The notes: a model not told the origin generated them from the sequence alone. Positions 1,059 through 58,367 are shown, counted from the first letter of the stretch. The stretch is DNA of 64,000 nt from Octopus sinensis (GCF_006345805.1 NC_043003.1:77500001-77564000), one strand, 5' to 3'. Numbers and translations are program-made.

Positions 1059-1139
1059 TCATACAGAAGTTGCATTGCAGTTACCATCAATGGTGTATAC
1101 TGCAACATCATTAACCCTCCGATTAAAGTAACCATTATG
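1059..1139 (-). CDS. elevenin: Probable terminal coding exon of the elevenin precursor: HNGYFNRRVNDVAVYTIDGNCNATSV*
   Basis: Acceptor atcatttttctttatAG. The phase-0 start matches exon 3 and there is a strong RNY bias. Alternatives are not excluded: a cAG|TGA acceptor near 12060, or an internal GTAACT donor near 1084. Confidence 0.55.
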   Translation of the reverse strand, partial: HNGYFNRRVNDVAVYTIDGNCNATSV

Positions 1140-1467
1140 CTATAAAGAAAAATGATAATCAACGAACCAGCTTAATTGAATGAGATGCATGCTGTGGCTA
1201 TATTCACCCTATATGAAAATATATATGTATAGGTATATATGATAATGTATGCCTAAATACTTAATGATCTGAGCATCCTGATATTCTACTTTTGTACCAG
1301 TGTATTGTGCACCAGTGCAAGAAATTTACTCATCTCTTATCATGTTGATCTTTTGGATATTAGTATTCAGGCCTACTATTTCTTTTCTCTTCTCAGTTTA
1401 TTCATCATGTTTCGCAGTGATTATTCATCGCGATCAGATCATCTGTGTTGTCAAAATCTCTAATGTA

Positions 1468-2400
1468 TTGGGTTGTCCGGAAAGTTCGTGCCGATTTTTA
1501 AAGGAAAGAAAAAGGTCAATAAATACTTGCCATTACATTTTTAATCAACCAAATATGAACCATTTTGTTGCTCAATGCGTCTCCATCTTTCCTTTAACTT
1601 GCAAATACCCTCTTCCCAGAATTGAGGTGGTTTCATGGCAAAGAATTCATCAAGGTATCTTTTTACGTCATCCAAGGAATTGAAATTTACCATTTACCAT
1701 TAAGACTATTCTGCAGAGACCTGAATAAGTGGAAATCCGAAGGAGCAATATCTGGTGAATATGAAGGGTTGGGTAACACATCCCAGCTGAGCTGCAGCAA
1801 TTTTTGTCTGGTTCCCAAAGAAACGTGCGGTATTGCATTATCATGTTGGAAAACAACACCCTTCCTGTTGGCCAATTCTGAACGTTTCTCTTGAATTGCT
1901 GCTTTTAACTCGTCCAGTTGTGTGCAGTATTTCTCAGAATTGTCTGGTTACTTAAGAGAAGCTCATAGTACAGAATTCCTTTCCAATCCCTCCAGACACA
2001 AAGTAAGGCATTTTTAGGGTGAAGACCCGCTTTTGGGGTGACTAAGGGTTGCTCATGTCGCTTACTCCAGGATCGCTTTCTCTGAACATTTCGGTAGATA
2101 ATCCATTTCTCATCACCTGGCACAATTTGCTTTAAAAAAGGCGCGTTTTCATTCCGTTTATAAAGCGAATCCCAGATGGAAATGCGATGCAAGAGATTCT
2201 TCTCATTCAACTCATGTGGTACCCAAACATCGTATCGATTCGTGTACCCAAGCTTTACCAGGTGCTCATGAACGACGGATTTTGATAGGTTGAGGCTTTC
2301 TGCCAATTCTCGGGTTGTGCAATGTGGGTTATTCTCAATTAATGACTTGATTTGGTCACCATCTGTAGTGGATGGTCTGTGTGATCGCTCTTTATCGAGG
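1468..2400 (-). mobile_element. Mariner (DD34D) transposon, 5'-truncated and frameshifted
   Basis: TA is followed by the TIR ttgggttgtccggaaagttcgtgccgattt at 1468. Motifs include WVPHEL, GDEKW, QHDNA, YSPDIAPSDFHLF (34 aa between D2 and D3) and the HTH RSHRP...TTRELAESLN. Confidence 0.92.
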
Positions 2401-2639
2401 AAAGGTGAGATGCTCTATCTCAGCGTATCTCCTTTCTTTCATTATATAGTCTGTAACGATTGCAGGCACCAGTGGAAAAAAGTCGTTCTGCAGTAATGTC
2501 ATTCTAATGGGGTATGAAGAGGTATTTACAGAAGGGATAATCTGAGAACAATAAGTAATGCATATATTCTCTAAAGTTTGGAAGTCAACCCGACAAAGAT
2601 TTATACCATTATAAGGTCTTGAGTTTCACTGGTGGGGTC

Positions 2640-3020
2640 ACTAGTGGTGTATGTTGCAGAGACCTCAATCAACAATGAAATCGTACTTAGACGTTTCCAA
2701 ATTTTCGAGAACAAAGCAATGAGGAGAATCTTGGGGATCTGATAGTAAGACTGTGTAAGGTATCAAATAATTTGAGATCATTAAAGTTAGATATCGACGT
2801 GGGGCAAATGGGTAACATTAAAAAATGTTCTACATATCCAGTCAGATAGAATATTATGGAAGATAGCTCAGTGGAAGTCAGTATGAATAAGACCAACTCT
2901 TACATGGCTGAGAACAATGAAGGAGAAAGACTGATGATGGACATGACAGAAGACAAGCATGTAGACTGGAACAGTTGGCGTGAATGCTTGGAAGCTCTTT
3001 GTTGTATCGTACAGCAATAG
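2640..3020 (+). mobile_element. RTE-clade LINE 3' end, degraded
   Basis: It translates with stops to RRFQIFENKAMRRILGI...RPTLTWLRT...DWNSWRECLEALC, the typical RTE C-terminus. Confidence 0.7.
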
Positions 3021-4154
3021 AGGCGGTAATAGTTATAGCATATGACATTATCTGGCCCAGTTTTTCATGCACATACGTCAAAAGCCTATGGGACACAATA
3101 CCAAATTTAACATTGCTTCATTCTTGTCTTTTGAACGCACGCACAGATAGGATCGGCGTGCTGATCTATGGGACGTATTGCTTGTTCTCTTAACACCTTT
3201 GAAACAGCGTATATTACTCGAAATAAGGACGACTTAAATATTTCTAAGGTAACATTTCAATACTTTTGGTGTTGCTGTTATTGATATTTAATGTTCAATC
3301 TACAATGCTAAAGACTTATATAACATTAATTATCTCAGTATTCTACAATACTTCGAGCAAACTACGACACATATATAAATATACACATGCATATATATAT
3401 GCGTATGTTTGTATATGTATATATGCGTGCATATGGGTGTGCATATGTATATGCTTGCATATGGGTGTGAGCATGCACACAACACTTGCGTATATGTGTG
3501 TGCATGTGTGAGTATATGCATATATAGCAGGCTGACAAATTCCACTTATAAGTTGTTAGTCAATTCGAGGTTACAGTTGGAGACACTTGGTTGATGTGCT
3601 GCCCAGTAGAAATAAAACCCCTAGTACATGGTTGCGCAATAAACGGGACTCTCAGTTTTCAACTCCCTATTTCAAAAGATGTGTGGGTCATGTTCAATAT
3701 CACGAGTGGTACCATTTTTTCAACAACGGACAGCAATCCCATTGCAAAGGTGCGTACTGTGGTCCGTGAAAATTGTCATCTGATTATATCTAAATATTCC
3801 AAAGAAGCAGAAATCTGTAAAAGTTCAGGTCAGGTAATTTCCAAAGAAAAATTGGAGAAGAACCGGAGTGCCGCGTCTATAGGAACCAAAGCGTTGTCAT
3901 CAAGGCGCTAGTTTGTGGTACGAATACTGATGAAAGCTTTCCAGAAGTTACACTGGTGATGAAAGGTAGATGCACGGGTACAATGTCAAACAAAAAGCAG
4001 TCCTCACAAAAGATTGGATCATCGTCACCGCTACAAAGAGTCACTTAAACGTGGAAATGATGCACGTTGAGAGCCGTTTATCATGAAATTATTTATTTAG
4101 GTGTCGTGAGACGGTTAAGAGAAGCTGTGCAAGATGGGGAGACTTAACAAATGG

Positions 4155-4325
4155 TGGAGGTGCGTGGCTTAGTGGTTAGGGTGTCAGCATCATGATCGTA
4201 AGATTGTGATTTCGATTCCTGGAGTGGGCGACGCGTTGTGTTCTTGAGCAAAACACTTCATTTCCCGTTGCTTCAGTCCACTCAGCTGGCAAAAATGAGT
4301 AACGCTGCGATGGACTGGCGTCTCG
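4155..4325 (+). mobile_element. tRNA-derived SINE, family C (V-domain-like gatggactggcgtc segment)
   Basis: A box TGGCTTAGTGG and B box TTCGATTCC. Related copies lie at 11530-11735(-), 15700-15903(-), 23170-23310(+) and 35165-35300(-). Confidence 0.75.
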
Positions 4326-4366
4326 GGAAACCTGGCCCATGACCTTTAAAAGGGCGCATTTATTCT

Positions 4367-4665
4367 GGAGGCACATCGCCTATGGTTAGAGTAGCAGACA
4401 CGCGGTCAAAGGATCGCGGGTTCGAATCTCAGACCGGGTGATGTGTGTGTTTATGAGCAAAACACCTAAGCTCCACGCAGCTCCGGCAGAAGGTAATGGC
4501 GAACTTCTATTGACTCTTCCGCCACAACTTTCTATCACTCTTTCCTCCTGCATCTTGCAGTTCACCTGCGACGGACCGGCGTCCCGTGCAGGTGGGGAAA
4601 CTATAAGCCAAGGAAACTGGGAAACCGGCCCTTATGAGCCAGGCATGGCTCGAGAAGGAACAAAC
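4367..4665 (+). mobile_element. tRNA-derived SINE (family C variant)
   Basis: B box GGTTCGAATC. It is colinear with the copy at 50823-51130. Confidence 0.75.
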
Positions 4666-4884
4666 AGTAACTTAACAAATGGATTAACAAACTATGGATA
4701 CTGCAACAAGATAACGCACCTACTCCGTTTTACTTACTCGCGATTTTTTGGGCAAAGTAATTCTCAGAAATTGGTAGCTGCGGATGGTTTTGTGCACCCA
4801 AAGTTGAAATCAACCCTAAGAAGTCATTGATTTCAGAGGATAAAAGAGTTCGACAAAACAGGTTATTTCTGAAAGCATGTTCCA

Positions 4885-5005
4885 GAATGAGTTGAGGTCG
4901 ACTTTGCCTTTCATCCTTTCGAGGTCAATAAATTAAGTACTAATCGACTGGCTTCCTCCCCCACCCACCACATTTCGGGCCTTTTGCCTATAGTAGAAAA
5001 TAATA
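4885..5005 (+). mobile_element. Nin/Deu-domain-like SINE (family B) 3' part
   Basis: It carries gtcgactttgcctttcatcctttcgaggtcaataaa, shared by many copies in the window. Confidence 0.7.
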
Positions 5006-5126
5006 TGCTGGGAATGAAGTATCAACAACGGAGAAAACAATTTGGAAAGACAGAAGTTTGATTAAATTGTGTGTAAAGTACATATTTGTTTTCTGAAATA
5101 GTCGGCTTCCTTTTAGATACACCTCG
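5005..5126 (-). mobile_element. Mariner-type terminal fragment
   Basis: The reverse complement begins TA-CGAGGTGTATCTAAAAGG...CCGACT, a mariner-type TIR. Confidence 0.5.
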
Positions 5127-5149
5127 TATTCATGTCTGCGCGTATGTGT

Positions 5150-8270
<3,121 letters not shown>

Positions 8271-9879
8271 GTGTGTTTGTGAGTGTGTGATTGTCAGTTT
8301 AGTTTAAAATGTGGGTTGACATATTCAAGATTTGCGCAATTTGCATCATTATTAGAACAATCATATACCTTAGAGAAATATATACAAAACAAGAAAAAAA
8401 TTGGCTTATATGCTCATATGATTTATCTTTATATTGATATCTTGTTTATTTGAATTCCACGAATACGCATCCAAAAATATTTCCATACCGAATACATCTT
8501 AATACAAGAGCAGCAAAAAGCTGGGATAGATTTCGTTAATTTCTCCCAGTTTAAAAAGTTAATATTTTTGATTCCACTGAGAGGTTGGATATGTTTTCTC
8601 ATGATGATTATTACCAATAGCCTATAGAGAAATGTCAATGAGTTCATTCTTGTATGATTCTGTTAGAATGGTCAGCTATTATCAGTAACGTGTTGGCTGA
8701 AAAACAAAAACAAAAAGAAACAAGAATTATAAAAGAATGTTTAAATATAATTTACCAAGAGAAAAATAATATGAAAAAATCAAATGAATACAGTTTTGTA
8801 ATGAATTCATTTATTGAAAAATTGTATGCGAAAACGAACAAAATAAAATGGCAATATTTTCATAACTATGGATATATGTGTGTATCAACGCAGTATTTAA
8901 CAACTACTTAAATGGTGTACTTAAACGGTGGATTTTCTATGAAAAAGATTTTCAGAAACAATAGCGATTACGTAATTTTTCGAAATTGCGCATCTTGCAT
9001 GTACACAAACAATAATATTTACGGTATACTGAACATTTATAGCACTTTGATAATCTGATTTAAGTTTATCTACGCTGACAAAGCAAACGTTATTTGGGAA
9101 GAGTTCTTCACTTGTTTTAATTTTAGTAAACGTGATTCGATTGTTTACCTCCAGAAATCTTCTTTATCAAAGCTCCATATTCTAAACATTATTTACAGCA
9201 CAGCAGTGGGACTTGGGTTTTGAGCCTTTTTAGAGACTCAAAGACACAAACAATTTCAGAATGAAGAAACATTTGAGTTGGCGGCGAATTGATAGACTCA
9301 TTAAAGCGTCGGATAGCACCACACCTCGTAGTATTTGTTCTGGTTCTCTATACTCGAGTTCAAATCTCGCCAAAACAATACTGCTTTTCATTTCGGAGTT
9401 GATTTAAAAAAGAAAATGGAATAATCTAGGGTAGTGAATTGGCGGAATTGTAAGAATTTCAGACTGGATACTTGTTCTGGTTCCTTACGTTCTGAGTTCG
9501 AATCACACCCTGACCTATTTGGGTGGTAGTCTTCATCCACCGACAAATTTAACATCATCAGCTAGCAACTTGGATGTCTTTAACGGAATCTACTCAGTGG
9601 CAAGCATTTGAGCAAGTCTTAGGGTAGAGGAGATTTCCATCTCTCCTATCAATTACGGAAGGTGGGGTCGAAAGTGTAAAAGGAAGTTCCTTTCCTCTTA
9701 ACAAAAAAGATAAACAAAAGAAACTTTTAACTGTACAGAAGATGGCCGAAAATAGCAACAGAGTACCATTCTGATATCTGGGATTGCGCACTTCATCCGG
9801 TGGGAGATTTTTTGAAAGATAAATCATAAAGAAAGCCACTCGTCTAATCCATAGTTCTCTCTTCATTATAGAATTAGAA

Positions 9880-10090
9880 GGCGGCGAGCAGGCAGAATAT
9901 TTAGCACGCCGGGGAAAATGCTTAGCGACATTTCGTCCGTCTTTACGTTCTGAGTTCAAATTTCGTCGAGGTCAACTTTGCCTTTCATGCTTTTGGGGTC
10001 AATAAAATAAGTACTAGTTGAGCACTGGGGGTCAATGTAATCGGCATAAATCCTCCCATGAATTTGCTGGCCTTTTTCCAAAAATTCAAA
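9880..10090 (+). mobile_element. Family B (Nin/Deu-like) SINE, full length
   Basis: The head is ggcggcgagcaggcagaa, with a gagttcaaat B box, the ctttcat..ggggtcaataaaataagtac domain and a gctggcctt tail. Confidence 0.85.
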
Positions 10091-10220
10091 TCTATATTAT
10101 AGAATTATCAATTATTTTGACTAATTTATCAAGCTTGTTACTTTCACACAGTATCCACCTCAAACGTTTCTTTACATTTATCTCTTGCTTCTCATTCTTT
10201 ACACTCTCTATATCTTATGT

Positions 10221-10580
10221 AGGCATGATTGTGTGATTAAGAAGCTCGCCTTGAAACTACATGGTTTTGGGTTCAATCCTACCGCGTAGCACCTTAGGCG
10301 ATGGTCTTCTATTCTAGCCAATGCTTTGTGAGTGAATGAGATAGAGAGAAACTGTATGGAAACCCGTTTCCTTGTGTGTGTGTGTGTGTGTGTCTATGTT
10401 TGCTACTCCCATCGCTTCGCTTGACAACCAGTGTTGGTATGTTTACGTCCCCGTAACTTAGTGGTCCGGCAAAAGAGACTGATGGAGTAAAAAAAAGTGC
10501 GCTGAGTCGAATTGTTCGTCTAAAACCCTCAAGGTGGTGCTTCAGCATGTCGCCGTCCAGTGACTGAAACAAGCAAAAGA
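10221..10580 (+). mobile_element. CORE-type tRNA SINE (family A), diverged
   Basis: It is colinear with 12968-13490 (B box, gcaccttagg, internal microsatellite, gactgaaacaag tail). Confidence 0.75.
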
Positions 10581-10667
10581 TATAGAAGATACCCTTCATA
10601 GAACCTCATCAAACACTTTTTGGAGGATTACTTTTCTCTTTCGTGTTTTCGCAAAGCATTAACATTG

Positions 10668-12445: not shown

Positions 12446-12554
12446 CTCATCTGAATAACTTCTGGTGTTATAGTACGGGTCCCTGCCTTCTCCTTTGGAG
12501 AGGAGGTAATTAAGTAAGACATCTCGATCGCTGTGTTCAGAATTGCCAACATCT
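12446..12554 (-). CDS. elevenin: Elevenin precursor, coding exon 3 (109 bp, phase 2-0): DVGNSEHSDRDVLLNYLLSKGEGRDPYYNTRSYSDE
   Basis: Long polypyrimidine acceptor ttttctttcttttctaaatttctAG and donor GAG|GTATGC. The phase matches exon 2, and this frame has an RNY codon bias. The ORF track shows a different frame of the same exon. Confidence 0.8.
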
Positions 12555-12967: not shown

Positions 12968-13490
<523 letters not shown>

Positions 13491-13621
13491 AATATATATA
13501 TATTAGAAGAAATGAAGTATATATATATATACAAGTATGGATATATGTCTATATGAATATATATGTGTATAGTAATGTATGTCTATATATATGTATATAT
13601 GTATACATGTGCGCATGTGTT

Positions 13622-24588: not shown

Positions 24589-24809
24589 ATATAATATATG
24601 GAAAAAAAATCAAGATAGAAAATGCTAAAATAATTTTATAAAAAACATTTCAATACCGGTTTCAGTCATTGAGGCTTTTTCAACTGTAAGTATAGAAGAT
24701 AATTAAATTTTGGAAAAATTAAAAGAAAAGTTTTTTTATAAGAATATTTTCATAGTGTTCAAATTCAAGTGACATTTTCCTTGTTTCTGTCTATCTCTGT
24801 CTCTCTGTT

Positions 24810-24876
<67 letters not shown>

Positions 24877-25005
24877 TACATACATACATACATACATACA
24901 TACATACATACATACATACATACGTACATGATAAATACTATTAATATGCGAAACATGGTTCTAAGTCCGGGTAACGTATATACATACATATATATGTATG
25001 TGTGC

Positions 25006-25051
<46 letters not shown>

Positions 25052-25458
25052 ATATATGTGTGTGTGTGTGTGTGTGCGCGCGTATATACAATACCGGACA
25101 TAGAACCATGTCTTGCATAGTAATACTATTTATCATGAGGAAGGAAAGCAGCAGTACCTAAACTACTTGTATCTTTTATACAAGATATAGCTGACATAAA
25201 ATCTGATTATCACAAATAGTAAACGAAGCGAAAATAAGAACCAACTGAAAATCCGTTATTGCAAATACTGCCGTCCTTTGCACGTAAACTATCACACAAT
25301 GTGCTCTACCGTCAAATTTGATATTTGAAACATATAAAAATGATAATGGTTGTTCATTGGAACAAGTAAACTCAATGAAATACAGAACTTGATATCAGTG
25401 TGCAATACAAACAGACATGTACACCGTCATGCATTCACACATGTATACAAACATGCAA

Positions 25459-34335: not shown

Positions 34336-34416
34336 CGTTCTTTGTCTTGAAAGTTCGTCATTGGGAATGATCTTTTGGCACCGACACCTCGACATCTTGG
34401 TGCATATATATACTTC
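34336..34416 (-). CDS. elevenin: Elevenin precursor, coding exon 2 (81 bp, phase 2-2): KYIYAPRCRGVGAKRSFPMTNFQDKE
   Basis: Very strong acceptor tttatcttttccttttcAG and donor CG|GTAAGG. The translation matches the elevenin family motif C-x2-F/Y-x-F/Y-AP-x-C-RG-V-x-A-KR (established family knowledge). Confidence 0.93.
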
Positions 34417-38062: not shown

Positions 38063-39499
38063 TATATAAGAAAAAAGGTTGAAAATGCAAATTAAACGAT
38101 GTTATTTACTTAACCGGTTTCACTCTTTGGTAAAAGATTGTCAAAAGTAACATTAAAAGTATCATTGAATAATATGGGTTCAAAAAAGTTTTTTACATAA
38201 TTGTCACATTGAATATTATGCATTCAAAAACGTTTTTTACATAATTGTCACATTGGATATTATGAATTCAAAAATGTTTTTTTATACAAAATTGTCACAT
38301 TACATGTATAAATATAGTGTTTGGTAACAGAGAAGTTCAATAGTGTGATGAGAATATTTGGAAAAATTGGCAGAAAAGGATAAAACAAATATATTATTGG
38401 AAATTTGGTTGCGTTAATTATTGGTTGTCGCAAATTGTCACATTACATGTATATATATACAGTCTTTGGTATATATATACAATATTTTGACAGCAAAAAT
38501 TAAAATGGATTTTTTATACATCTCAGAATATTTTAAGTTGAAGGCGAGAATGTGTTGTTACTAACCTGTTTGTTTTAGCAGAAGGGTTGAATTGAGAGAA
38601 AAAAGGTTGTACCCAGTGTGGTGTATACTCCCCTTCAAGCATCAATGGTTTTGGGGTTATCAGGAGGTTAGTATGCCTGCTGGTCAAGGATAATGGATAG
38701 TGTGTTGTGTGTATATATTATATATGTGGGTGCGTTGTGTGTGTGTGTGTGTTCTGTGTGTGTGTGTGTGTGTGTTGTGTGTATGTGGTGTGTGTTTGTA
38801 TACTATGTGTGTGTGTGTGTGTGTTGTTGTGTGTGTGTGTGTGTGTGTGTGAATATATGTGTGTGACAAACAGACGCTGCTTGACCAGCAGGCATACTAA
38901 CCTCCTGATAACCCCAAAACCATTGATGCTTGAAGGGGAGTATACACCACACTGGGTACAACCTTTTTTCTCTCAATTCAACCCTTCTGCTAAAACAAAC
39001 AGGTTAGTAACAACACATTCTCGCCTTCAACTTAAAATATTCTGAGATGTATAAAAAATCCATTTTAATTTTTGCTGTCAAAATATTGTATATATATACC
39101 AAAGACTGTATATATATACATGTAATGTGACAATTTGCGACAACCAATAATTAACGCAACCAAATTTCCAATAATATATTTGTTTTATCCTTTTCTGCCA
39201 ATTTTTCCAAATATTCTCATCACACTATTGAACTTCTCTGTTACCAAACACTATATTTATACATGTAATGTGACAATTTTGTATAAAAAAACATTTTTGA
39301 ATTCATAATATCCAATGTGACAATTATGTAAAAAACGTTTTTGAATGCATAATATTCAATGTGACAATTATGTAAAAAACTTTTTTGAACCCATATTATT
39401 CAATGATACTTTTAATGTTACTTTTGACAATCTTTTACCAAAGAGTGAAACCGGTTAAGTAAATAAACATCGTTTAATTTGCATTTTCAAACCTTTTTT

Positions 39500-44470: not shown

Positions 44471-44789
44471 TATATATTTATACCCATACAAACATAAATA
44501 CGTACATACATACACATATAATCTATTTTGTTCTTTCCTGTATTAGACAGTTAGATATGATTTGAGGGATATTTGGTTGCTATATCTTAAGAAGTTTAGC
44601 GACTAGGTAGAAGCTCCTTTTAAACTATTAGTTCTATCAGAGACTGCGTGGGTGGCGCCATCAAAGGCAGTTGAGATGAATAAACTAAGAGACGCTGATT
44701 CATTTGTAGATTGCGGCAGGAGAGGTGAGGGTGAGGATAATAATCATGATGGCTGTGGTTGTTGTTTTGATGTTGCTTTGATGCTAGGG

Positions 44790-44825
44790 GCGACGACGAC
44801 GACGACGACGACGCTGATGATGACG

Positions 44826-44856
<31 letters not shown>

Positions 44857-45005
44857 GCTGCTGCTGCTGCTGCTGATGATGATGATGATAATGATGATGG
44901 CTGTTGTTACTATCGTGGTGATGGTGGCGGTGCTGATTGTAGTGACAATGATGAAGATTATGAAGATAATGGTGGTTACAGTCGCTGCTACTACTGCTGC
45001 CACTG

Positions 45006-45089
<84 letters not shown>

Positions 45090-45163
45090 ACAGTACAAAT
45101 ATTGCTGTCGTTTCATAATGATGATAATGATAACGATGATGCGACGGTGGTGGTAGTGGTGAT

Positions 45164-45203
<40 letters not shown>

Positions 45204-45220
45204 CGGTGATTACAACGACG
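44790..45220. repeat. Compound trinucleotide array (GAC/GAT/GCT/ACT)n
   Basis: The array is directly visible and is the source of the poly-A/V/I/S ORFs. Confidence 0.95.
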
Positions 45221-46138
45221 ATGATATGTAATATCACACAATGAAACAACCATTTCCAATATTTTCTTTCTTGATCAATGCCATTCCAAAACAAACAGAG
45301 ATATACAAATAGAGATAATTTCATTATTTTATTTTTATTTACTTTCAGCTTGTTTCTTCTGTTAAGCTTTGGTATTGCATTTTTATCTATATTTTGTTCT
45401 AAGTTTCTTTCTTCTTTCTTTCCATCTATCTCTCTTTCTTTCCTTCCTTTACATCAAACTCGTGTTTACATAAAAAAGTAATTATCGATCTGAAGTCTGC
45501 CGGAATCATCTCACAACCGATAGTTCACTAAATGATTTATTAAAGTACAGTTGTGGCGATGGCTTCATATAGTAGTAATCAAACGCATATTTATACATTC
45601 TTATATAAATAAACACATAGACACAGACATGCACAAAGAAATACATACATACATACATACATACATACATACATACATACATACATACATACACACATAT
45701 AAAAATGTCTGGAAATTATGGGCAAGACATGCTAAGTCAAACTGCACTTCAAACAAAATAAACGCCCGTATCTTACCCTCCGAAAACGTGTGGGCCTTAT
45801 TATTTATATGTATACATACGTACGTGTACATACATACATACATACATACATACATACATACATACATACACAAACACACACTCATATGCTTATGCATGTA
45901 CGTTTATAAGTATGTACATGTATCAATAGAGGGAGAAGACCGTAATATGCATATATGCATCTATATTTGTTAATATGCACATGTGTGTATGTGTGTGTGT
46001 ATGGGATTAACCAGAAGTATACAAACCTGCGTTCAATAAAATATGTGTGTATACAATCATATTTAATACGTTTGTATACACAAGAACGTAGGAAGACCTT
46101 TGCTGCAGAAATAGCTCCGGAAAAAATTCATTCATAGA

Positions 46139-46879: not shown

Positions 46880-47940
46880 TATGTTATCTTTTTTTCTTCT
46901 TCTTTCAAATTTGTTTCCATTTCTTGCCGAGTGTCTTCCGGAATCCTAGGGCAAAGAAACTCATAATATACATTGGTAGGCCATTAAACTAAACTCACTA
47001 GTTCGTTCATTTTTTTTTTTAAAGTTAAATTAAAATACATGGGTAGTAATAGTTCTCACATCGACAATGCTCTTCTCAATACGTGTGATGTACCAGTTCA
47101 GACAATCTTTTGCACTTCTTGCAGGGATGGTAAGCCAGGGATCATTCTCATATAATTTTCGGTTCCCTTCTTGATCATTCCTAGTGCTCCTACGATCACT
47201 GGTATTGTAACCGCCTTGAGATGCCACATTTTCTCAATTTCAATGAGCAGGTCTTTATATTTTCTGAGCTTGTCAAACTCTTTCGCCGAGATATTATGAT
47301 CACAGGGGATGCTCATGTCGATCAATAAGCAAACTTTATTGTTTTGGTCTTTCACAACAATATCTGGTTTATTGGCTTTGATGGTTCGGTCTGTATGTAC
47401 TGGGAAGCCCCACAGAATCGTTACATTTTCTCCTTCAGTTACAGCTTCAGGGTGGTGATTATACCACTTGTCGGCAGTTTTGATATTGTAATGCCGACTT
47501 ATTAGCCAGTGTAGATATTGTCCAACTCTGTCATGTCTTAATTTATACTCCACTGGTGCTAAGACTTTACATCCAGAGATTAGGTGGTCCACTGTTTCAA
47601 TCATGTCGTTGCAGATTCGGTATTTTGGGTCTGTTCCATTTTTCATCACATTGGCCTGGTAGTTCCGGGTTAATAGGCTTTGATCTTGAGCAGCCAGGAT
47701 GAAACCTTTCTCTCTGCTTTTAGCCCTGAGCTCCGTAGCCACTGATGGGTTTGCTTCTGGTCAACATCAGCTTCTTTGCTGCGTTTGCCTCCCACCTATC
47801 AGCCAATTGCTCGTGCGCTTTTTTCGTAGCCATTATTTTCACCTTCTTTGCAACAATAGTTGCCGTACTTCCCTCGGGTTGTTCAGTTTGGGTATCCTGC
47901 ACGGGATCAATAGCAAATTTTTTGCTTTCCTTTATGATAG
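46880..47940 (-). mobile_element. R4/Dong-clade non-LTR retrotransposon, 5'-truncated, embedded in (TAA)n
   Basis: The 214-aa ORF has GFILAAQDQ, the knuckle (Y)RIC..ETVDHLISGC, RHDRV, NKPDIVV..LIDMSIP and IPVIVGALG. TAA/TGA repeats lie on both sides. Confidence 0.9.
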
Positions 47941-48295: not shown

Positions 48296-48340
<45 letters not shown>

Positions 48341-49423: not shown

Positions 49424-49470
<47 letters not shown>

Positions 49471-50822
49471 GTACATAAAAACATTCATAAATATATATAT
49501 AATACATATACATACACAGAGATAAATAACCTTCTATGTATCATACTTAATATAAGCATAACGGATTTGTGCGTGTGTGTGCTTGTGTGTGTGTGGTGTG
49601 TGTGTGTGCGTGCGTGTGTGTGTGTGCACGCGCGAGTGTGTGTGTATGCGCACAAATCACTTATGATAAATGGAAAAATTATAGCCGTTAGCAGTGCGAA
49701 CGGTACTAAGTTGTATATAGATATTTGATTTGCAGTTTATTTCATTGGGAACAAATCAACTTCATGTGTATTCGTTAACTACATATTCACCAGCAGCCTT
49801 CATCATCAAATTTGTTTGTGTGGTCAGGCGAAATTCATCGTCTACATCCTTTTTGAAAAATGTCTGCCGCTGTAAGCTAAATTCAATGGCTTCTTTTGAA
49901 TGAAAATTGTCAATAGCAGTCTTGCGACGTTAATTCGAACCATCGATGTTTTCGATTAAGCATTCTTCTCTATTACTGCGACAGGAGTAAAAAAAAAATC
50001 ATACAAGAAAAAGAACCAACTTAAGCAGTGGGCCATTTCAGGGATATTTTGATTTTCTGCTCCTCGCCAAGACCGCATATTCTGCCCCGTTCCGTTATGA
50101 CGTCACATGATTCCATTAACGGCTCTCTTCTCATTGTAGCTTTTACCATTAGCTGATGATGGCATGTTTTGCAATAACTATCAGGACAACTTATGCCAGC
50201 CATTTTAGATTCACCAGCAGGGATAAGTATAAATTTACTTCACTTCATGAACAACCAGCTAATTAAGTAGTCACATTACAAAAAGAAAGTAAAATGGCAG
50301 TCAACAAAGATCTGTTCAATAGCACGCTTACCAGCCTTCGTATTACGCCAGTTGTTTACCACACACTCTTCAGACTAGTAAGCCCTGTAAAAAATCCTGT
50401 TGCCAATACAGAAACTGCGACAGGACAACTTGAAAACTTGTTTAGGGTTCTGTTGCTCAAATCTAGCTCCTGACACGACACCTTTGCCACTATTGTTATG
50501 ATATCCGCAGTTCACATTCGTCACTGACATGTTAGCCTGATCATAATGTATTTTGTTCAGCCAACATATTTTCCGTTTCTCTCCACTGACAAAATCAACT
50601 TTGAACGTAACCCTTCCTTTATCTAATCTAACATTAGCTATATGCTTAGTTAAAGAGCTATTTAAAACAGTAAGTCGATTCTGCGAGTTCCTATAAAAAG
50701 AATGTTCACCACAACGAAATTATTTGCCTAACTATATGAGACATTTAAAAAGAACTTCTATTCATGCCCATATATAAAGTATTACTCATATCGGTGATGA
50801 CATTTAAAACTTCTCAAGTACT

Positions 50823-51130
50823 CAAGTGGCGGCGCAATGGCCCAGTGATTAGGGCAGCGGACTCGCGGGCAGAGGATCGCGGTTTCGATTTCCTGACCGG
50901 GCGTTATGTGTGTTTATTGAGCGAAAACACCTAAAGCTCCACGAGTCTCCGGCAGGGGGTGGTGGCGATCCCTGTTGTACTCTTTCACCCCAAATTTCTC
51001 TCATTCTTTCTTCCTGTTTCTTGAGTAACGCTGAGATGGACTGGCGTCCTGTCCAGCTGGGGGGAACACATACGCCATAGAAACCGGGAAATCGGGCCCA
51101 TGATCCTGGCTAGGCTTGAAAAGGGCGAAA
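50823..51130 (+). mobile_element. Family C tRNA SINE, full length
   Basis: A box tggcccagtga, B box ggtttcgatttcc, the gatggactggcgtcctgtccag segment and an A-rich tail. Confidence 0.85.
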
Positions 51131-51262
51131 AAAATAAAGTACTCAAGTACAGCAGTTTAAATGAAATATGTACACACAACCTCGGGTACAAACATTTGCT
51201 AATGTTTCATATTACTTCGTTTAATTAAATAAATAAACCACCACTAAGACCAGGTAGGTCGC

Positions 51263-51299
<37 letters not shown>

Positions 51300-51303
51300 C
51301 ACA

Positions 51304-51334
<31 letters not shown>

Positions 51335-51968
51335 CACGTACACAATAACTATATACTGTAAATATCAAGGCTATTATTTTTTGAACACACATATATAAAC
51401 ATACATGCATTTAAATGTTTAGAAAAAGTCAGCTATAGGAAATAACTTAAGACCTATGACATTTTTTTGGTTAAATCAGGTTGGTGATGTACTGAATGAC
51501 GTATACTAAAAGAATTATTAATGAATTGAAACTTTCCTTTTGGAGAAAGAAAACGAAAACCTAGCAGCATTTTTTGATGATTTTCAATAAAATGTAAAGA
51601 TAATTTATATCTATAATGAGATTTCTAGAAATGGCGATGCCTATGCCTATTGTATTTTAAATTGAGGAAAGGTCTTGCACAGGGCTAATCTCATTCACTA
51701 AACAACATATGTAATTGACCAAGAGGAAGGATTTCTACAATCATTGGTTGCAAACGAAGTCACAGGTGTTACATCAGAGTTTTCCTTTTGGAAAAATATT
51801 CAAGCATGGACGGCCCGACCATGCAACAGGTTGTAATGGGTAACTTGTTACCAGTAGCATAAAAATTGACACATACATAACACATAAACACACACATACA
51901 CACACATATATATGTACAGACACATACACACTCATGTAAATACATATACACTCACACAAATATATATA

Positions 51969-52197
51969 TTCATTATAGCCCACAAGGGGCTAAACATAGA
52001 GGGGACAAACAAAGACAAACAAAGAGATTAAGTCGATTATATCGACCCCAGTGCGTAACTGCTACTTATTTAATCGACCCCGAAAGGATGAAAGGCAAAG
52101 TCGACCTCGGCGGAATGTGAACTCAGAACATAACGGCAGACGAAATACTGCTAAGCATTTCGCCCGGCGCGCAAACGATTCTGCCAGCTTGCCGCCT
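51969..52197 (-). mobile_element. Family B SINE, young subfamily (agcccctt.tggg tail)
   Basis: It is a monomer nearly identical to 59315-59548. Confidence 0.88.
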
Positions 52198-52294
52198 CAC
52201 ACAAATATATATATTCATATATATATATATATATATATAATATATATATATATGATAGATAGATATAGATATAATATATATACACACATATATT

Positions 52295-52340
<46 letters not shown>

Positions 52341-52689
52341 CGCACATATATACACATGTACATACACGCTTATAAATACATGCACATAGGCTCGCGCACG
52401 CACACACGCACACACACAAACAAACAGACAAAGATATATTTTCTAATGTTCCCGAAGAAGAGCCTATGATCGAAATCTTATAGACACTGCTTCCTTTCCT
52501 TTCATCGAGTGTCAATCTAATAAGTACTCTGTATATTCACTTTCTTTTTTCTGTTATACTTGCATCTGTACATACATACATACACACATACATACATACG
52601 TCTCATCTACCGATGAGACACGATCTTTTAACCAAGATACTGTATAATGTGATCCGTCGGATGGACAACCCTGTGACCAAAGAGATAAG

Positions 52690-53340
52690 AACCCACAGTA
52701 TGATAGAGGCCATAGCCACTTATAATATAGAAGAGCATTAGTGGAATGTCCCAGTGAAAACTTCAATAAAATGTAGACTATTAGATCGGACACTGTGATT
52801 TGGGACAGAGAAGTGAAACTGTACCATAGTGGAAATCAATTGTGCGGCAGGCGTCAACATAAGCTAAAGATCAGTGAAAAAGGAAATAGTTAGGCTGAAC
52901 TATTGAGGAACTCACAGTTTTTCTACCCGGATTACAAATTCAGGTTTATAGCTGTAATCATCGGGGTACTGGAGTATGTAATGCACAGTCTAAGCACCAA
53001 TCGTGACAAATTAGGCTTCTCAAACAAGAAGGGAGAAAGCTAATTCGATGTCTACAAATTCAAGCCATCACTGGAACTATAGAAATTTGTAAAACTTTCC
53101 AGAAGTTTAGCACTTGAGTATATATACGCATATCTAGGCATGCAACTATATGAGAATACATACATAAAATGAAACATACAAATGTATACATCCACGGGTT
53201 CCAAATACTGCATATATATACACACATGCATGCAAAATACCCTACTGATGTTGATGAAATTCCAATGTATAAGCTTTAGATCTAGGTTAGAAACCTCTTT
53301 CTATATTGGCAAGAAATCTTGGAATAAAACTGAATAATTA
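52690..53340 (+). mobile_element. REL-endonuclease LINE 3' end (same family as 29075-29990)
   Basis: It encodes WNVPVKTSIKC..PDTVIWDRE..TIVEI..KISEKE..ELLRNSQFFYPDYKFRFIAVIIG. Confidence 0.8.
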
Positions 53341-54840
53341 CATACATACATACATACATACATAATACATACATACATACATACACACATACATACATAC
53401 ATACATACATACACACACACACATGCATACATACATACATACATACATACATACATACATACATACATACATACATACATACATACATACTTGCATACAT
53501 ACATACATTCATACATACATACATACAAAGAGATGGTGTTACATTTGAGTTCCATAGTCTTTGCGGGATTCCTGAAGTCTCCTATTCCACCAGCTTTACC
53601 CCTGGCAAATCAGCATGGTTTTCTTTTATCTTTATATAAATTATATCCTACTAGGAATTGAACGCAGGCAAGACAGTTAGCTGATGAAACAATAATATAA
53701 TTGAGAGTTGCTTCTCATCTATGTACACTATTGTGTTATACATAACCATTGTCTTTTCTTTAAGACACACTAAATAATGTAGTTTTAGATACACAATTTC
53801 CTATGAATAATGGGTTGATCATGGCTGGAAAGACTTCTGTAATCTGTCTACACAGTCAGAACTAACCTCGAGCTAAACGTCTCCAACAACATAACTATTG
53901 TATCTATTCGTTATTAGGTTGAATTGATCATATAAGATTTAAGTAACTTCGACAGTAAAAACATCGCAGCGTTAGCGGCCAAATTCAGCCATATTTTGAC
54001 TGGAAGTAGACCAACATAAATATCACATAAATATACAGACATCAGAAGTAAATATATATTATTTAATCTACAAAGCTCCAGCAGTTTCAAATTGTTTCCA
54101 TGATATCCTTATCCTCAGTATTCGCTCGTATAAATTGACTGTCAATGGAGAGGCGACGCATTTATTTACCAAACGGAAATGAAAGGATAGTTTGTTTAGA
54201 TCATATCAAATAAGGAACGTTGAGAGATTTGTTTATCAATATCTAGATGAATTGAAATAGCTTTAGCTTTAATCTGTAATTTTTTTGCAAGCACATCCTC
54301 CATATAATAAAACCTATATTCGCTGAACTATTAATCCCGGGGAAAATTATTCATTTCGATATCAACTATCACTGGATACAACAAGCAGAATTGGGCCACA
54401 AACAATATAAACAATCAAACGGTGTAAGTATTTTTACTGATTAGCATTAAAAAAAAAACAAAAAAACAAAAAGAAAGGAAAAAGAAAAGCCAGTGCAATA
54501 GCTTCAGTGAGTATATAACATCATAGAGGATTTAAAATGCGGGGGAAGTGCAGATATGTTTATGAAAATTAGCCTAATTTTTGCCTTTATTACTGCAATT
54601 ATAATTTAATTTTCTAATCATTAACTGTAGAATCACTATTTTCTCTCATTCAGTCGACGGAAAAGAATAGAAACATACACTTATATATATATATATATAT
54701 ATATTTACATTTCTACACACACACACGCACGAATGCGTAGGACTTGATTTTAGATACATAGTTTTGCATAAAAATAAATTCTATTTTAGTTTCCGATTAG
54801 AAGTCATTTCAAAACTAATGAGATAGCTGCTAAGTAGTGA

Positions 54841-54937
<97 letters not shown>

Positions 54938-55305
54938 CACACACATTCATTTATTTATAACACGTGACCCGCGCTCACGCTCTCAATCAGCTATCGATTG
55001 CTTCACAAATATTTCGGCAACTTCCGACATTATCTTTTCCACTGAACAATGTAGCATTTATTCTAGTAGGAAATATGCGGGATATTTGGAATCACATTGT
55101 AGCACGCCTTTTCCTTCGTTATCTGTTCACCCACTACATTAAGTGTGCACTGTTATAACCACTCCATTCGAGCAGTAACTGTCTTGCTTTACTGTTCGTT
55201 GGTGATATCTACAGGAAATACCGTATGTTAGCATCTTCGTATCTCACAGTTTCTTAAGTTCTTCATATTTGAGGCATTTCTTGTTCTATATAAACGCAAT
55301 GTATA

Positions 55306-56308
55306 GGCACAGGTGTGATTGTGTGGTAAGAAGTTTGCTTCTCAGTTACCTGGTCCCGGGTTCAGTCCCAGTGCGTGGCACCTTAGGCAAGTGCCTTCTG
55401 CTACAGCCTTGGGTTGACCAAAGCCCTGTGAGTGGATTTGGTAGACGGAAACTGCAAGAGGCCCGTCGTATATTTATATATGTATATATCTATGTGTGTG
55501 TGTCATTGCATATGTGTTTGTTCACCAATACCAGTTTACAACAGCCGTTGGTGTTTTTGTGTCGCCGTAACTTAGAGGTCCGGCAAAAGAATAAGTACCA
55601 TGCTTTACGAAAATATTTTCTTTCTTTATTGCCTACAGGGGGCTAAACACAGAGAGGACAAACAAAGGGATTAAGTCGATTACATTGACCCTAGTGCGTA
55701 ACTGGTACTTATTTATTCGACATCGAAAGGATGAAAGGCAAAGTCGACCCCGGCGGAATCTGAGCTCAGAACGTAACCGGCAAACGAAATTCCTATTTCT
55801 TTATTACCCACAAGGGGCTAAACACAGAGAGGACAAACGGATTAAGTCGATTATATCTATCCCAGTGCGTAACTGGTACTTATTTAATCGATCCCGAAAG
55901 GATGAAAGGCAAAGTTGACTTTGGCGGAATTTGAACTAAGAACGTAGCGGCAGACGAAATACCTATTTCTTTACTACCCACAAGGGGCTAAACACAGAGA
56001 GGACAAACAAGGACAGACAAAGGGATTAAGTCGATTATATCGACCCCAGTGCGTAACTGGTACTTAATTTATCGACCCCGAAAGGATGAAAGGCAAAGTC
56101 GACCTCGGCGGAATTTGAACTCAGAACGTAGCGGCAGAAGAAATACTGCTGAGCATTTCGCCCGGCGTGCTAACGTTTCTGCCAGTTCACCACCTTTACG
56201 AAAATAGAATAAGTAATGGTGTCGATTCATTCGACAAAAATTCTTCAAGGCGGTGCCCCAGCATGACCGCAGTCAAGTCACTGAAATAAATAAAAGATAA
56301 AAGATAAA
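55306..56308 (+). mobile_element. Family A SINE interrupted by a nested family B trimer
   Basis: The 5' half is 55306-55615 and the 3' half is 56194-56308. Confidence 0.85.
55616..56193 (-). mobile_element. Trimeric family B SINE with 13-bp TSD
   Basis: ctttacgaaaata lies at 55603-55615 and 56194-56206. There are three head-to-tail units. Confidence 0.9.
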
Positions 56309-56329
56309 ACTTCCCAGTTTGCTGTTAAC

Positions 56330-57270
56330 TCGACTTTTTAAGAACTTTTTCTTAAAACTAGGATGCTGGATCCTTATTGCAACATGGCTTGAGAATTTGA
56401 GCGTTGTTCTAAGCGGAAGGCATAAATTCTACCACCTAACAAAGTGGAAGCGGCCCAAAGCAATATGTAGTCGGGAGGGTTTATTAGAAGAGAAAGCAAA
56501 AGAAAAAGAGAGGTTGGAATATCCCAGTAGATGCAGTGGCTATTTTAGGCTACAAAGCTGGAGCCTGTGGCTGTTGTTGCGTCTGCTTCAGGCGCATTAC
56601 GGGTCTTATGTCTAAAAATACCCAGAGCTGAAGCAAATGAGATCGTCTTGTCTTGAGAGTTTCTAGTTGAAGGGTGCCAAAGGTCATATAGCGGCATCAA
56701 GAAATCTAGGTCTCTCCCCTTTAAGCATAAAACCGACCAAAGGCTTTTGGCAGCATCAACAGCAACGATTTTACTATTTTGTTACGGTAGGGCAGAGATA
56801 TTTGAAAAGTTGGAAATCGTCGTAGAGAGTATATAAAAAGAAACAAAAGTAGCAACTAAAAGAACGAATCCAGACTAAAAGCAGGAAAGAGTCTGGAAGT
56901 CCTTCAAGTTGAGGTTCTCTGAAAAACCCCACAGATAACCTATATGTCTGTTGAACGACCTGAAAGAAACAAAGATTAAGGAGATAGGACTGAATCTATA
57001 GACACTTAATTAATAGACTATTGTTAGACAGCCTGGATCTAACTTTCCAGGTGCCTAGCTACAGGTCCATCAACTATTTTGGCTAATTTTGGCTCTTGTC
57101 GCCGACTCGTAACCTCCTTAGAGCGATGTCAGTCACCACACCAATTGCATATCAATAGCTAAACAGAGAAAATGACGCACAAACCATCCCGCCTTAATCA
57201 ACACCAACAATACTCACCGTATTACGTTGCAATACCGAGACCAAGACAGGGTGCTCAGGGTTGCTCGGAC
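56330..57270 (-). mobile_element. CR1-group LINE RT C-terminal remnant
   Basis: There are degenerate traces of AAKSL..VL and HKTRNAPE..SHCIYW (cf. YKAQIRP.LEYCSHIW). Confidence 0.45.
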
Positions 57271-57387
57271 GTACAGGCTGAGCAACACATACATACATGC
57301 ATACATACATACCTACCTACATACATGCATGCATGCATACATGCATACATACATACATGCATACATACATACATACATACATACATA

Positions 57388-57900
57388 CAAATTCCGCCGA
57401 GGTCGACTTTGCCTTTCATCCTTTCGGGGTCAATAAATTAAGTACCAGTTACGCACTGGGGTCGATATAATCGACTTAATCTGTTTGTCTTTCCTTGTTT
57501 ATACTTTCTGTGTTTAGCCCCTTGTGGGTAGTATAGAAATAGGTATTTCGTCTGCCGCTACGTTCTGAGTTCAAATTTTGCCGAGATTGACTTTGCCTTT
57601 CATCCTTTCGCGGTCGATAAATTAAGTACCAGTTACGCACTGGGGGTCAAGGTAATCGACTTAATACCTTTATATGTCCTTGTTTGTTCCTTCTATGTTT
57701 AGCCCCTTGAGGGCAATAAAGAAATAAGAATCGTTAGCAGGCTGGACACAATGCTTTTCGGCATTTCCGTTGGCTTTACGTTCGGAGTTCAAATGCCACC
57801 ACGGTCGACTTTGCTTTTCAACCTTTTGGGCTCAATAAAATAAGTGCCAGTCGAGCACTGGCGTCGATGTAATCGAATAGACCTTCACCCAAATGTTTAG
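57388..57900 (+). mobile_element. Family B SINE dimer followed by an older family B copy, next to the exon-1 donor
   Basis: It has the same gaaata|ggtatttcg junction as the trimer. Confidence 0.85.
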
Positions 57901-57953
57901 GCTGTATTGTTGTTGCTGTTATGTTAATGTAAATTTAAGAATATAATACCTAC

Positions 57954-58075
57954 CGACAGTCTATTTTCCTCTTCATTCCTGGACTACTCTGTTCACTGAT
58001 ATGAACTGTGATGAGAAGGATTGCAATCGTCCATACCAAACACTTCTGGTATGTTTTGTTGCACAGTTGTAACAT
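57954..58075 (-). CDS. elevenin: Elevenin (L11) neuropeptide precursor, coding exon 1: signal peptide, KR site and first Cys (MLQLCNKTYQKCLVWTIAILLITVHISEQSSPGMKRKIDC + CG)
   Basis: The ATG at 58075 has acaATG context. The exon begins at 58102 after the acceptor ttgtttcattgcAG and ends in phase 2 at the donor CG|GTAGGT. It has a hydrophobic core (LVWTIAILLITV) and joins in frame to the 34416 exon to give DCRKYIYAPRCRG. Confidence 0.9.
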
Positions 58076-58367
58076 TGTTCTGGATCTATAGTAAACTTGC
58101 TTCTGCAATGAAACAATAATATGCAATATTAGATTCAAGTTTAATTATATTATTTAGTCGAATCGAGGATAACATATGATAATAATGTAAGTCAATTAAA
58201 ATTACACCTGTACAAGATTAATAAATAAATTTTTGTGAAGGGAGCATACTACGATGTTTGGATAAGAAGTTCAAAAATATAATTGTGGAACATGTAGAAG
58301 TCTTCTTTAAATGCAAGGACATCTCTGGGGTGTTTTACTTAACCTTTTCAGTGAAATATTGTCTTAC

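What the first reader, a model, noticed from the sequence alone, without database searches (positions are those of the whole stretch)
1059..58102. Hidden 57-kb elevenin (L11) neuropeptide gene spanning the whole window
Seen: four short minus-strand exons with GT-AG sites and matching phases (2, 2, 0) splice into a 130-aa ORF with a signal-like N-terminus and KR-KIDCRKYIYAPRCRGVGA-KR. Established: C-x8-C peptides ending in C-R-G-V-x-A before KR are elevenins. Inference: the mature peptide is non-amidated KIDCRKYIYAPRCRGVGA (or IDCR...). It has Y-I-Y where I recall F-x-F being usual, so it may be a lineage-specific variant. Only 393 coding bp are spread over 57 kb, so ab initio annotation could miss or fragment the gene.
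Basis: partly seen in the sequence, partly recalled or inferred. Interest (0 to 1): 0.75.

Follow-up and report, generated by a model that had tools for sequence, protein, structure and literature searches.

The report
Known octopus elevenin (L11) neuropeptide gene

Summary
The window is Octopus sinensis chromosome CM016865.1, 77,500,001-77,564,000 (100% over 64 kb). On the minus strand it carries the coding exons of the elevenin (L11) precursor gene.

So are the junctions 57954/34416 and 34336/12554 and the acceptor at 58102. The evidence is two spliced transcript contigs, with 1 mismatch in 580 nt.

The fourth exon (1139-1059) is wrong. Transcripts and all annotated orthologues splice 12446 to 8696, giving ...YSDE-PTRY-stop (108 aa, not 130). 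An AATAAA lies at 8450-8445.

The gene is not hidden. RefSeq names it 'abdominal ganglion neuropeptide L11-like' (XP_036360741.1, XP_029639375.2). UniProt A0A6P7SM57 is in a published elevenin alignment (PMC9963005). l11 is a marker gene in the O. vulgaris brain atlas (PMC9712504).

The predicted peptide (K)IDCRKYIYAPRCRGVGA keeps 8 of the 9 residues reported as conserved; Y replaces F11. Y-x-Y also occurs in a sea slug and two unnamed clusters.

The gene is larger than the window. A non-coding 5' exon lies outside it, and the CDS range in O. vulgaris is about 106 kb. It is ordinary and already known.

The parts
57954..58102 (-). First coding exon (at least the second exon of the transcript). 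It holds 27 nt of 5' UTR (58102-58076), the start codon at 58075-58073, the signal-like hydrophobic N-terminus, the spacer EQSSPGM, K35-R36, and the start of the peptide (KIDC + CG of R41). Donor GT is at 57953-57952, phase 2.
   Evidence: The transcripts L002/L003 align from 58102 (or 58105, with 3 nt ambiguous) to 57954. The protein is identical to XP_036360741.1.
34336..34416 (-). Second coding exon. It encodes the rest of the elevenin peptide (R)KYIYAPRCRGVGA at 34416-34377, the dibasic K55-R56 at 34376-34371, then SFPMTNFQDKE(R). Phase 2 at both ends.
   Evidence: It is 100% identical to the transcripts over 81 nt. The exon boundaries are conserved in Argonauta.
12446..12554 (-). Third coding exon. 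It encodes the C-terminal precursor-associated region DVGNSEHSDRDVLLNYLLSKGEGRDPYYNTRSYSDE and ends in phase 0.
   Evidence: It is 100% identical to the transcripts over 109 nt. The LLNY(L/I)LS motif is shared with Argonauta and a relative found only in sequencing-run assemblies, P0007, whose closest named relative is the cuttlefish protein P0008.
8437..8696 (-). The true terminal exon. The CDS PTRY-stop is at 8696-8682, followed by the 3' UTR with AATAAA at 8450-8445. The acceptor AG is at 8698-8697 behind an 18/20 pyrimidine tract. Transcript L003 ends at 8437; the exact poly(A) site was not determined.
   Evidence: It is 100% identical to the O. bimaculoides-type transcript over 243 nt and 80% conserved in Argonauta.
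57954..57967 (-). The 5' part of the mature-peptide coding sequence (K37-I-D-C40 and the first two bases of R41). The intron splits the peptide inside the disulfide ring.
   Evidence: with codon arithmetic on the sequence.
34377..34416 (-). The 3' part of the mature-peptide coding sequence (third base of R41 through A54, including C49).
   Evidence: with codon arithmetic on the sequence.
1059..1139 (-). It is rejected: intergenic sequence about 7.3 kb downstream of the poly(A) signal, and not part of the gene.
   Evidence: The 130-aa product is absent from the 15-billion-protein collection.

Best explanation
The window carries the four coding exons of the Octopus sinensis elevenin (L11) prepropeptide gene on the minus strand. 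At least one non-coding 5' exon lies outside the window.

Shown: the spliced mRNA encodes a 108-aa precursor.

Inferred from the sequence and from what is known of the family:
- An N-terminal signal peptide (hydrophobic core CLVWTIAILLITV) directs the precursor into the secretory pathway.
- Prohormone convertases cut at K35-R36 and K55-R56, and carboxypeptidase removes the basic residues.
- This releases one copy of KIDCRKYIYAPRCRGVGA, or IDCR... if cleavage follows K37. The peptide is non-amidated because it ends in Ala.
- It is closed by a C40-C49 disulfide into an 8-residue ring.
- By homology with Aplysia, the cyclic peptide is a neuronal signal acting on rhodopsin-type elevenin GPCRs. In Aplysia the disulfide and the D, P, R, G residues are needed for receptor activation.
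For: Exon structure: cDNA-type contigs match the joined exons 58102-57954 / 34416-34336 / 12554-12446 / 8696-8456 with 1 mismatch in 580 nt.

Identity: the window is 100% identical to O. sinensis CM016865.1. The product is identical to XP_036360741.1 / CAI9725929.1, 'abdominal ganglion neuropeptide L11-like'.

Family:
- A profile search of 1.84 billion representatives gives 31 hits at E<=1e-3. All carry [IVL]-[DN]-C-x2-[FYH..]-x-[FY]-A/H-P-x-C-R-G followed by KR.
- The hits include proteins named L11 in Physella acuta and Plakobranchus ocellatus, and the Sepia pharaonis protein.
- Aplysia elevenin is RPRIDCTRFVFAPACRGVSA, with conserved I4, D5, C6, F11, P13, C15, R16, G17, V18 (PMC10175484). 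The octopus peptide has I, D, C, Y, P, C, R, G, V at those positions.

Literature: A0A6P7SM57 (= P0001) is listed as the octopus elevenin in PMC9963005. l11 is expressed in defined neurons of the O. vulgaris paralarval brain (PMC9712504).
Against: - No peptidomic evidence for the mature peptide, its termini or the disulfide in octopus was found or could be produced here.
- The signal peptide is inferred from hydrophobicity and position only; no signal-peptide predictor was available.
- The transcripts that prove the junctions encode the O. bimaculoides-type protein (L22 instead of I22), so they come from a sister species, not from O. sinensis itself.
- Pfam has no elevenin model, so there is no curated-threshold test.
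- The annotated isoforms X1 (119 aa) and the O. vulgaris 150-aa model start at upstream ATGs, which would bury the signal peptide.
Confidence: 0.95

Rival explanations
1. Exon 3 is sometimes spliced to 1139-1059, skipping the 8696 exon and its poly(A) site, and this gives a 130-aa precursor with a different C-terminal tail.
For: The segment has a YAG acceptor with 15 of 20 pyrimidines, a phase-0 ORF of 26 codons and a stop. The ORF also stays open in O. bimaculoides.
Against: - No 20-mer of it occurs in either transcript contig.
- The 130-aa protein is not in the 15-billion-sequence collection, and all five annotated isoforms in three Octopus species end in PTRY.
- It shows 8 of 81 nt differences, 6 of them non-synonymous codon changes, at the background divergence of about 88%. 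The real exons are at 99.8-100%.
- It was not found downstream of the Argonauta gene.
- Eighteen other acceptors of equal or better quality exist.
- It lies 7.3 kb past the AATAAA.
Confidence: 0.03
2. The N-terminally extended annotated products are the real proteins. These are X1, MQKQVYYRSRT-M..., and the 150-aa O. vulgaris model, which start in upstream exons. The internal hydrophobic segment would then act as a signal anchor, not a cleaved signal peptide.
For: Both models exist in public annotation. The frame is open through 58102 into the upstream exon.
Against: - The extension is not conserved. Argonauta, O. bimaculoides and the Sepia protein P0008 start at the M equivalent to 58075.
- In nearly all 31 family clusters the peptide sits 25-41 residues from the N-terminus, as expected for a cleaved signal peptide.
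- In the O. bimaculoides-type transcripts the called ORF starts at that M, after about 750 nt of AT-rich UTR.
Confidence: 0.04
3. The four-exon pattern is a chance alignment of short ORFs in non-coding DNA, and there is no gene.
For: None beyond the general point that short AG...GT-bounded ORFs are frequent in 64 kb of AT-rich sequence.
Against: Spliced transcripts exist. The coding exons are conserved at 100% against a background of 88%. Orthologues are conserved as far as Argonauta and cuttlefish, and there are profile hits to named L11 proteins.
Confidence: 0

Closest known systems
Octopus sinensis 'abdominal ganglion neuropeptide L11-like' (XP_036360741.1 isoform X2; XP_029639375.2 isoform X1 = UniProt A0A6P7SM57), identical to O. 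vulgaris CAI9725929.1
   Same: It is the same gene. The window is 100% identical to the annotated chromosome. The 108-aa product of exons 58075-57954, 34416-34336, 12554-12446 and 8696-8682 is identical to isoform X2.
   Different: Nothing differs for the true model.
Aplysia californica elevenin / neuron L11 peptide (P06518; RPRIDCTRFVFAPACRGVSA; receptors apElevR1-3, PMC10175484)
   Same: Both have a single peptide copy soon after the signal peptide, C-x8-C, and I-D-C...A-P-x-C-R-G-V-x-A followed by KR. Eight of the nine conserved residues are identical.
   Different: Y-I-Y replaces F-V-F. F11 becomes Y at a position where Ala substitution lowers potency in Aplysia. The ring holds basic R-K in place of T-R, and G replaces S before the terminal A. 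The precursor is 108 aa against 151 aa. The rest of the precursor is not alignable outside cephalopods.
Decapodiform cephalopod elevenins (Todarodes pacificus CKVFIFHPKCRGVAA, PMC10172372; Sepia pharaonis A0A812CC38 ...LNCRKFIFAPRCRGVAAKR)
   Same: These have the same precursor layout and the same N-terminus MLQL... They share the LLNY(I/L)LS motif in the C-terminal region, and the profile E-values are 2e-17 and 4e-13.
   Different: Squid and cuttlefish have F-I-F, N in place of D before the first Cys, and V-A-A at the end. Octopus has Y-I-Y, D and V-G-A.
Argonauta hians LOC106868937-like (GAB1599990.1)
   Same: It is 68% identical, with the same three intron positions and a conserved terminal exon starting with P.
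   Different: It has no KR before the peptide, so the N-terminus would be set by signal peptidase. It has H-V-F in the ring. It ends GVGGGG-KR, which would allow C-terminal amidation, unlike the Ala-ended Octopus peptide.

Membership tests
Elevenin (L11) neuropeptide precursors | Two cysteines separated by exactly 8 residues in a peptide of about 17-20 residues | tested here: met
   C40 and C49 in KIDCRKYIYAPRCRGVGA. The spacing is the same in all 31 profile hits. The definition comes from PMC10175484 and PMC9963005.
Elevenin (L11) neuropeptide precursors | The conserved residues I4, D5, F11, P13, R16, G17, V18 (Aplysia numbering) around and inside the ring | tested here: met
   The octopus peptide has I, D, Y, P, R, G, V. 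Six of the seven are identical and F11 is conservatively replaced by Y. Y at this position also occurs in Plakobranchus L11 and in other clusters.
Elevenin (L11) neuropeptide precursors | Precursor layout: an N-terminal signal peptide, one peptide copy directly or shortly after it, and a dibasic cleavage site after the peptide | tested here: met
   The hydrophobic core is at residues 12-24 and the peptide at 37-54, with KR at 35-36 and 55-56. In the relatives the motif starts at residues 25-41 in most clusters. The signal peptide itself is judged by eye only; no predictor was run.
Elevenin (L11) neuropeptide precursors | Detectable sequence homology to named L11/elevenin precursors | tested here: met
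   A profile HMM of the octopod sequences hits Physella acuta 'L11-like' (E 8e-8), Plakobranchus ocellatus 'neuropeptide l11' (E 8e-4), the Sepia pharaonis protein (E 4e-13) and nemertean homologues. Pfam has no model for the family.
Elevenin (L11) neuropeptide precursors | Mature peptide present in vivo with an intramolecular disulfide | not testable with these tools
   This needs peptidomics of octopus nervous tissue. No such data were found in the papers searched.
Elevenin (L11) neuropeptide precursors | Activates an elevenin-type rhodopsin-family GPCR | not testable with these tools
   This has been shown only for Aplysia among molluscs (PMC10175484). The octopus receptor orthologues were not sought here and are not in this window.
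Elevenin (L11) neuropeptide precursors | Neuronal expression | not tested
   It is reported for O. vulgaris l11 in cholinergic subesophageal neurons and an optic-lobe cluster, IGL4-L11 (PMC9712504). The tissue of origin of the transcript contigs used here is unknown.

The most novel reading that the evidence does not exclude
The Octopus-genus change of both ring aromatics from F to Y, together with the basic R-K at ring positions 1-2 and the non-amidated V-G-A end, may have shifted the potency or selectivity of the peptide among the several molluscan elevenin receptors. Squid and cuttlefish have F-I-F and Argonauta has H-V-F. The neighbouring Argonauta lineage may have independently converted the peptide to an amidated, signal-peptidase-defined form. 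That would be a case of rapid ligand remodelling within octopods of an otherwise very conserved peptide.
Probability: 0.1. Interest if true: 0.25.

Novelty: already known. Interest (0 to 1): 0.07.

Why it matters
It matters little as a discovery. The gene is annotated in RefSeq under the L11 name. Its protein is in a published elevenin alignment, and the transcript is in use as a neuronal marker in octopus.

The check is useful for two reasons:
- It is a calibration case. A tool-less reader can correctly recover a neuropeptide core and three micro-exons scattered over about 50 kb. The terminal exon of such a gene, however, cannot be chosen from sequence alone, because any pyrimidine-rich AG followed by a stop will do.
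- It gives exact window coordinates for the real gene model: a 108-aa precursor, a terminal exon at 8696, and a 5' exon off-window.

Tried and rejected
- Pfam scan of both the 108-aa and the 130-aa products gave no family, so Pfam could not test membership.
- I looked for a duplicated alternative exon 2 that could encode the O. vulgaris isoform with CRYYIY. tblastn of the window found none. Shifting both splice sites 4 nt downstream in this window gives C-R-stop, so that isoform cannot be made from this sequence as it stands.
- I looked for the 5' UTR exon of the transcripts in the window, in 23 kb upstream in O. sinensis (L005) and in 10 kb upstream in O. bimaculoides (L001). It was not found. 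The O. vulgaris CDS range of 105.6 kb suggests it lies about 56 kb upstream.
- I looked for the upstream exon of isoform X1, which should end ...ATGCAG before a GT donor, in L005. No such site was found. This is unresolved and outside the window.
- Rfam and tRNA scans of the window found nothing.
- The O. vulgaris locus DNA could not be fetched because the gene range is too long. P0006 is not on record as a gene product.
Full report
**Origin of the window.** The window is 100% identical over all 64,000 bases to the Octopus sinensis assembly GCA_006345805.1, chromosome record CM016865.1. It was fetched as locus L005 through the protein XP_029639375.2. By coordinate arithmetic the window corresponds to 77,500,001-77,564,000 of that record, in the same orientation. 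G+C is 36%.

**The observation.** Joined, they give a 393-nt ORF of 130 aa with phases 2, 2 and 0, exactly as stated. The ORF contains KR-KIDCRKYIYAPRCRGVGA-KR.

**What the databases hold.**
- A search of the 5.8-billion-cluster protein collection with the 130-aa product returned a 119-aa protein named 'abdominal ganglion neuropeptide L11-like isoform X1 [Octopus sinensis]', at 97% identity over 83% of the query. It also returned a 105-aa Argonauta hians protein.
- The cluster also holds a 108-aa isoform X2 of O. sinensis that is identical to an O. vulgaris protein. It holds the O. bimaculoides orthologue and two further O. vulgaris isoforms.
- All of these match the window's product for the first 104 residues and then end in PTRY. 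Argonauta ends in PRQD.
- The exact 130-aa sequence is absent from the 15-billion-sequence collection.

**The true last exon.** A pattern search for AG followed by codons for P-T-R-Y-stop finds one site in the window. It is on the minus strand, with the acceptor AG at 8698-8697 and the CDS at 8696-8682.

**Transcript evidence.**
- Looking up the O. bimaculoides protein returned the genomic locus and two short contigs from assemblies of sequencing runs: L002 (1357 nt, SRR32601320) and L003 (1325 nt, SRR16213285). In both, the 108-aa ORF is uninterrupted. L002 ends in Illumina adapter sequence. These are spliced cDNA-type sequences.
- Both map to the window as four blocks: 58105/58102-57954, 34416-34336, 12554-12446 and 8696-8456/8437.
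- The four window exons joined (580 nt) differ from L002 at one base, the I22/L22 codon, and from L003 at four.
- The junctions 57954/34416 and 34336/12554 and the acceptor at 58102 are therefore confirmed. The third junction is 12446/8696, not 12446/1139.
- An AATAAA lies at 8450-8445, and L003 ends at 8437.

- No 20-mer of it occurs in the transcripts.
- Its O. bimaculoides counterpart differs at 8 of 81 bases, with six non-synonymous and two synonymous codon changes. That is the neutral level: mean identity of about 50 kb of aligned sequence between the two loci is 88.2%. The real exons and 243 nt of 3' UTR are identical or nearly so.
- In Argonauta the region of the true exon 4 is conserved (80% over 353 nt).
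- Between exon 3 and the window's start there are 19 YAG acceptors with at least 15 of 20 upstream pyrimidines, and eight open a terminal ORF of 20 codons or more. A terminal exon needs only an acceptor and a stop, so it cannot be chosen from sequence alone.

**Extent of the gene.**
- The transcripts carry about 750 nt of AT-rich 5' UTR upstream of the 58102 junction.
- This UTR matches nothing in the window, in the 23 kb upstream in O. sinensis, or in the 10 kb upstream in O. bimaculoides.
- In O. vulgaris, the 150-aa model that begins in the upstream exon has a CDS range of 105.6 kb. That implies a first intron of roughly 56 kb.
- The window therefore holds all of the conserved coding sequence but not the first exon or the promoter.
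- The coding span is 49,394 bp for 327 coding bases.

**Family membership.**
- Pfam has no model.
- A profile of the octopod sequences was searched against 1.84 billion representative proteins. It found 31 proteins at E<=1e-3. All carry the motif [IVL]-[DN]-C-x-x-aromatic-x-[FY]-[AH]-P-x-C-R-G, followed by KR in nearly all of them.
- Named members include 'abdominal ganglion neuropeptide L11-like' of Physella acuta and 'neuropeptide l11' of Plakobranchus ocellatus. The Sepia pharaonis protein and two nemertean proteins are also hit.
- The Aplysia peptide is RPRIDCTRFVFAPACRGVSA. The residues reported as most conserved are C6, C15, G17, R16, P13, D5, F11, V18 and I4. Loss of the disulfide abolishes activation of the three Aplysia receptors, and Ala substitution of G17, R16, P13, D5 or F11 lowers potency (PMC10175484).
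- The octopus peptide keeps eight of the nine, and Y replaces F11.
- Among the sequences collected, the ring aromatic pair is F-x-F in 13, Y-x-F in 11 and Y-x-Y in 8. Five of those eight are the Octopus proteins themselves. The other three are Plakobranchus and two unnamed clusters.
- Y-I-Y is therefore a mild variant, specific to Octopus among the cephalopods seen here. Squid and cuttlefish have F-I-F and Argonauta has H-V-F. It is not unique in the family.

**Prior knowledge.**
- UniProt A0A6P7SM57, which is the isoform X1 protein, is listed as the octopus sequence in the elevenin alignment of the Conus elevenin-Vc1 paper (PMC9963005).
- The O. vulgaris paralarval brain atlas reports elevenin (l11) in a cholinergic subesophageal cell type and names an optic-lobe cluster IGL4-L11 (PMC9712504).
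- A squid elevenin-like peptide has been described (PMC10172372).
- Elevenin is listed among peptides conserved across molluscan classes (PMC6425005).

**Mechanism.** The exon structure, the precursor sequence and its homology are shown. The following steps are inferred from established prohormone processing and from the Aplysia work:
- signal-peptide cleavage after the hydrophobic core;
- convertase cleavage at K35-R36 (or after K37) and at K55-R56;
- carboxypeptidase trimming;
- no amidation, because the C-terminal residue is Ala and not Gly;
- a C40-C49 disulfide;
- action on elevenin GPCRs.

The N-terminally extended annotated isoforms are probably longest-ORF artefacts. The extension is not conserved, and it would bury the signal sequence.

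**Verdict.** It was wrong about the last exon, the size and the claim that the gene is hidden. The finding is an already annotated and published gene, and interest is low.

Noticed in passing
window 38102-38688 and 38880-39466 (intron between coding exons 1 and 2): A perfect 587-nt inverted repeat (100% complementary) sits around a 191-nt GT-rich spacer. In O. bimaculoides the flanks are colinear, but only about 280 nt lie between them instead of about 1.6 kb. The palindrome is therefore either a very recent O. sinensis-specific event or a fold-back artefact of the long-read assembly.
   Followed up: partly
window 1905-2306, minus strand: This is a remnant of a mariner-type transposase ORF (Pfam PF01359 Transposase_1, E 1.6e-13).
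   Followed up: partly
window 47098-47742, minus strand: A 214-aa ORF in the first coding intron resembles, from memory only, the C-terminal region of non-LTR retrotransposon ORF2 proteins. It has no Pfam hit at E<=0.01.
   Followed up: partly
window 8456-8681, minus strand (3' UTR): The 3' UTR is 100% identical over 243 nt, including the 15 nt of CDS, to the O. bimaculoides genome and transcripts. Neighbouring non-coding DNA is about 88-90% identical. About 350 nt are still 80% conserved in Argonauta. This suggests constraint on the UTR, for example regulatory or localisation elements.
   Followed up: no
window 57948-57954 and 34412-34416; O. vulgaris protein CAI9725930.1 (P0006): One annotated O. 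vulgaris isoform reads CRYYIY instead of CRKYIY at the exon 1/2 junction. In this window, moving the donor and the acceptor 4 nt downstream (GT at 57949-57948, AG at 34414-34413) gives C-R-TAG, so the isoform cannot arise here. It may reflect a sequence difference in O. vulgaris or an alignment artefact at the junction.
   Followed up: partly
L004 (Argonauta hians BAAFZT010000013.1), protein P0002: The Argonauta orthologue lacks the KR in front of the peptide and ends ...CRGVGGGG-KR. Its peptide would start at the signal-peptidase site and could be C-terminally amidated, unlike the Octopus peptide.
   Followed up: no
L005 1-23262 (O. sinensis, upstream of the window's end): The collection puts the start of the isoform X1 gene 13.2 kb upstream of coding exon 1, which is window-equivalent position 71363 and so outside the window. 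No ATG-CAG/GT donor that would yield the annotated 'MQ' was found there, so the first exon of X1 is unresolved.
   Followed up: partly
window-wide, e.g. 5086-5844, 6102-6685, 13089-13534, 24765-25161, 44620-45324: The introns are dense in microsatellites (TA/TATG/CA/GT and trinucleotide runs). These create many spurious ORFs of 110-250 codons on both strands, such as YIYIYI..., CVCVCV... and poly-A/S/I. None is evidence of a gene.
   Followed up: no
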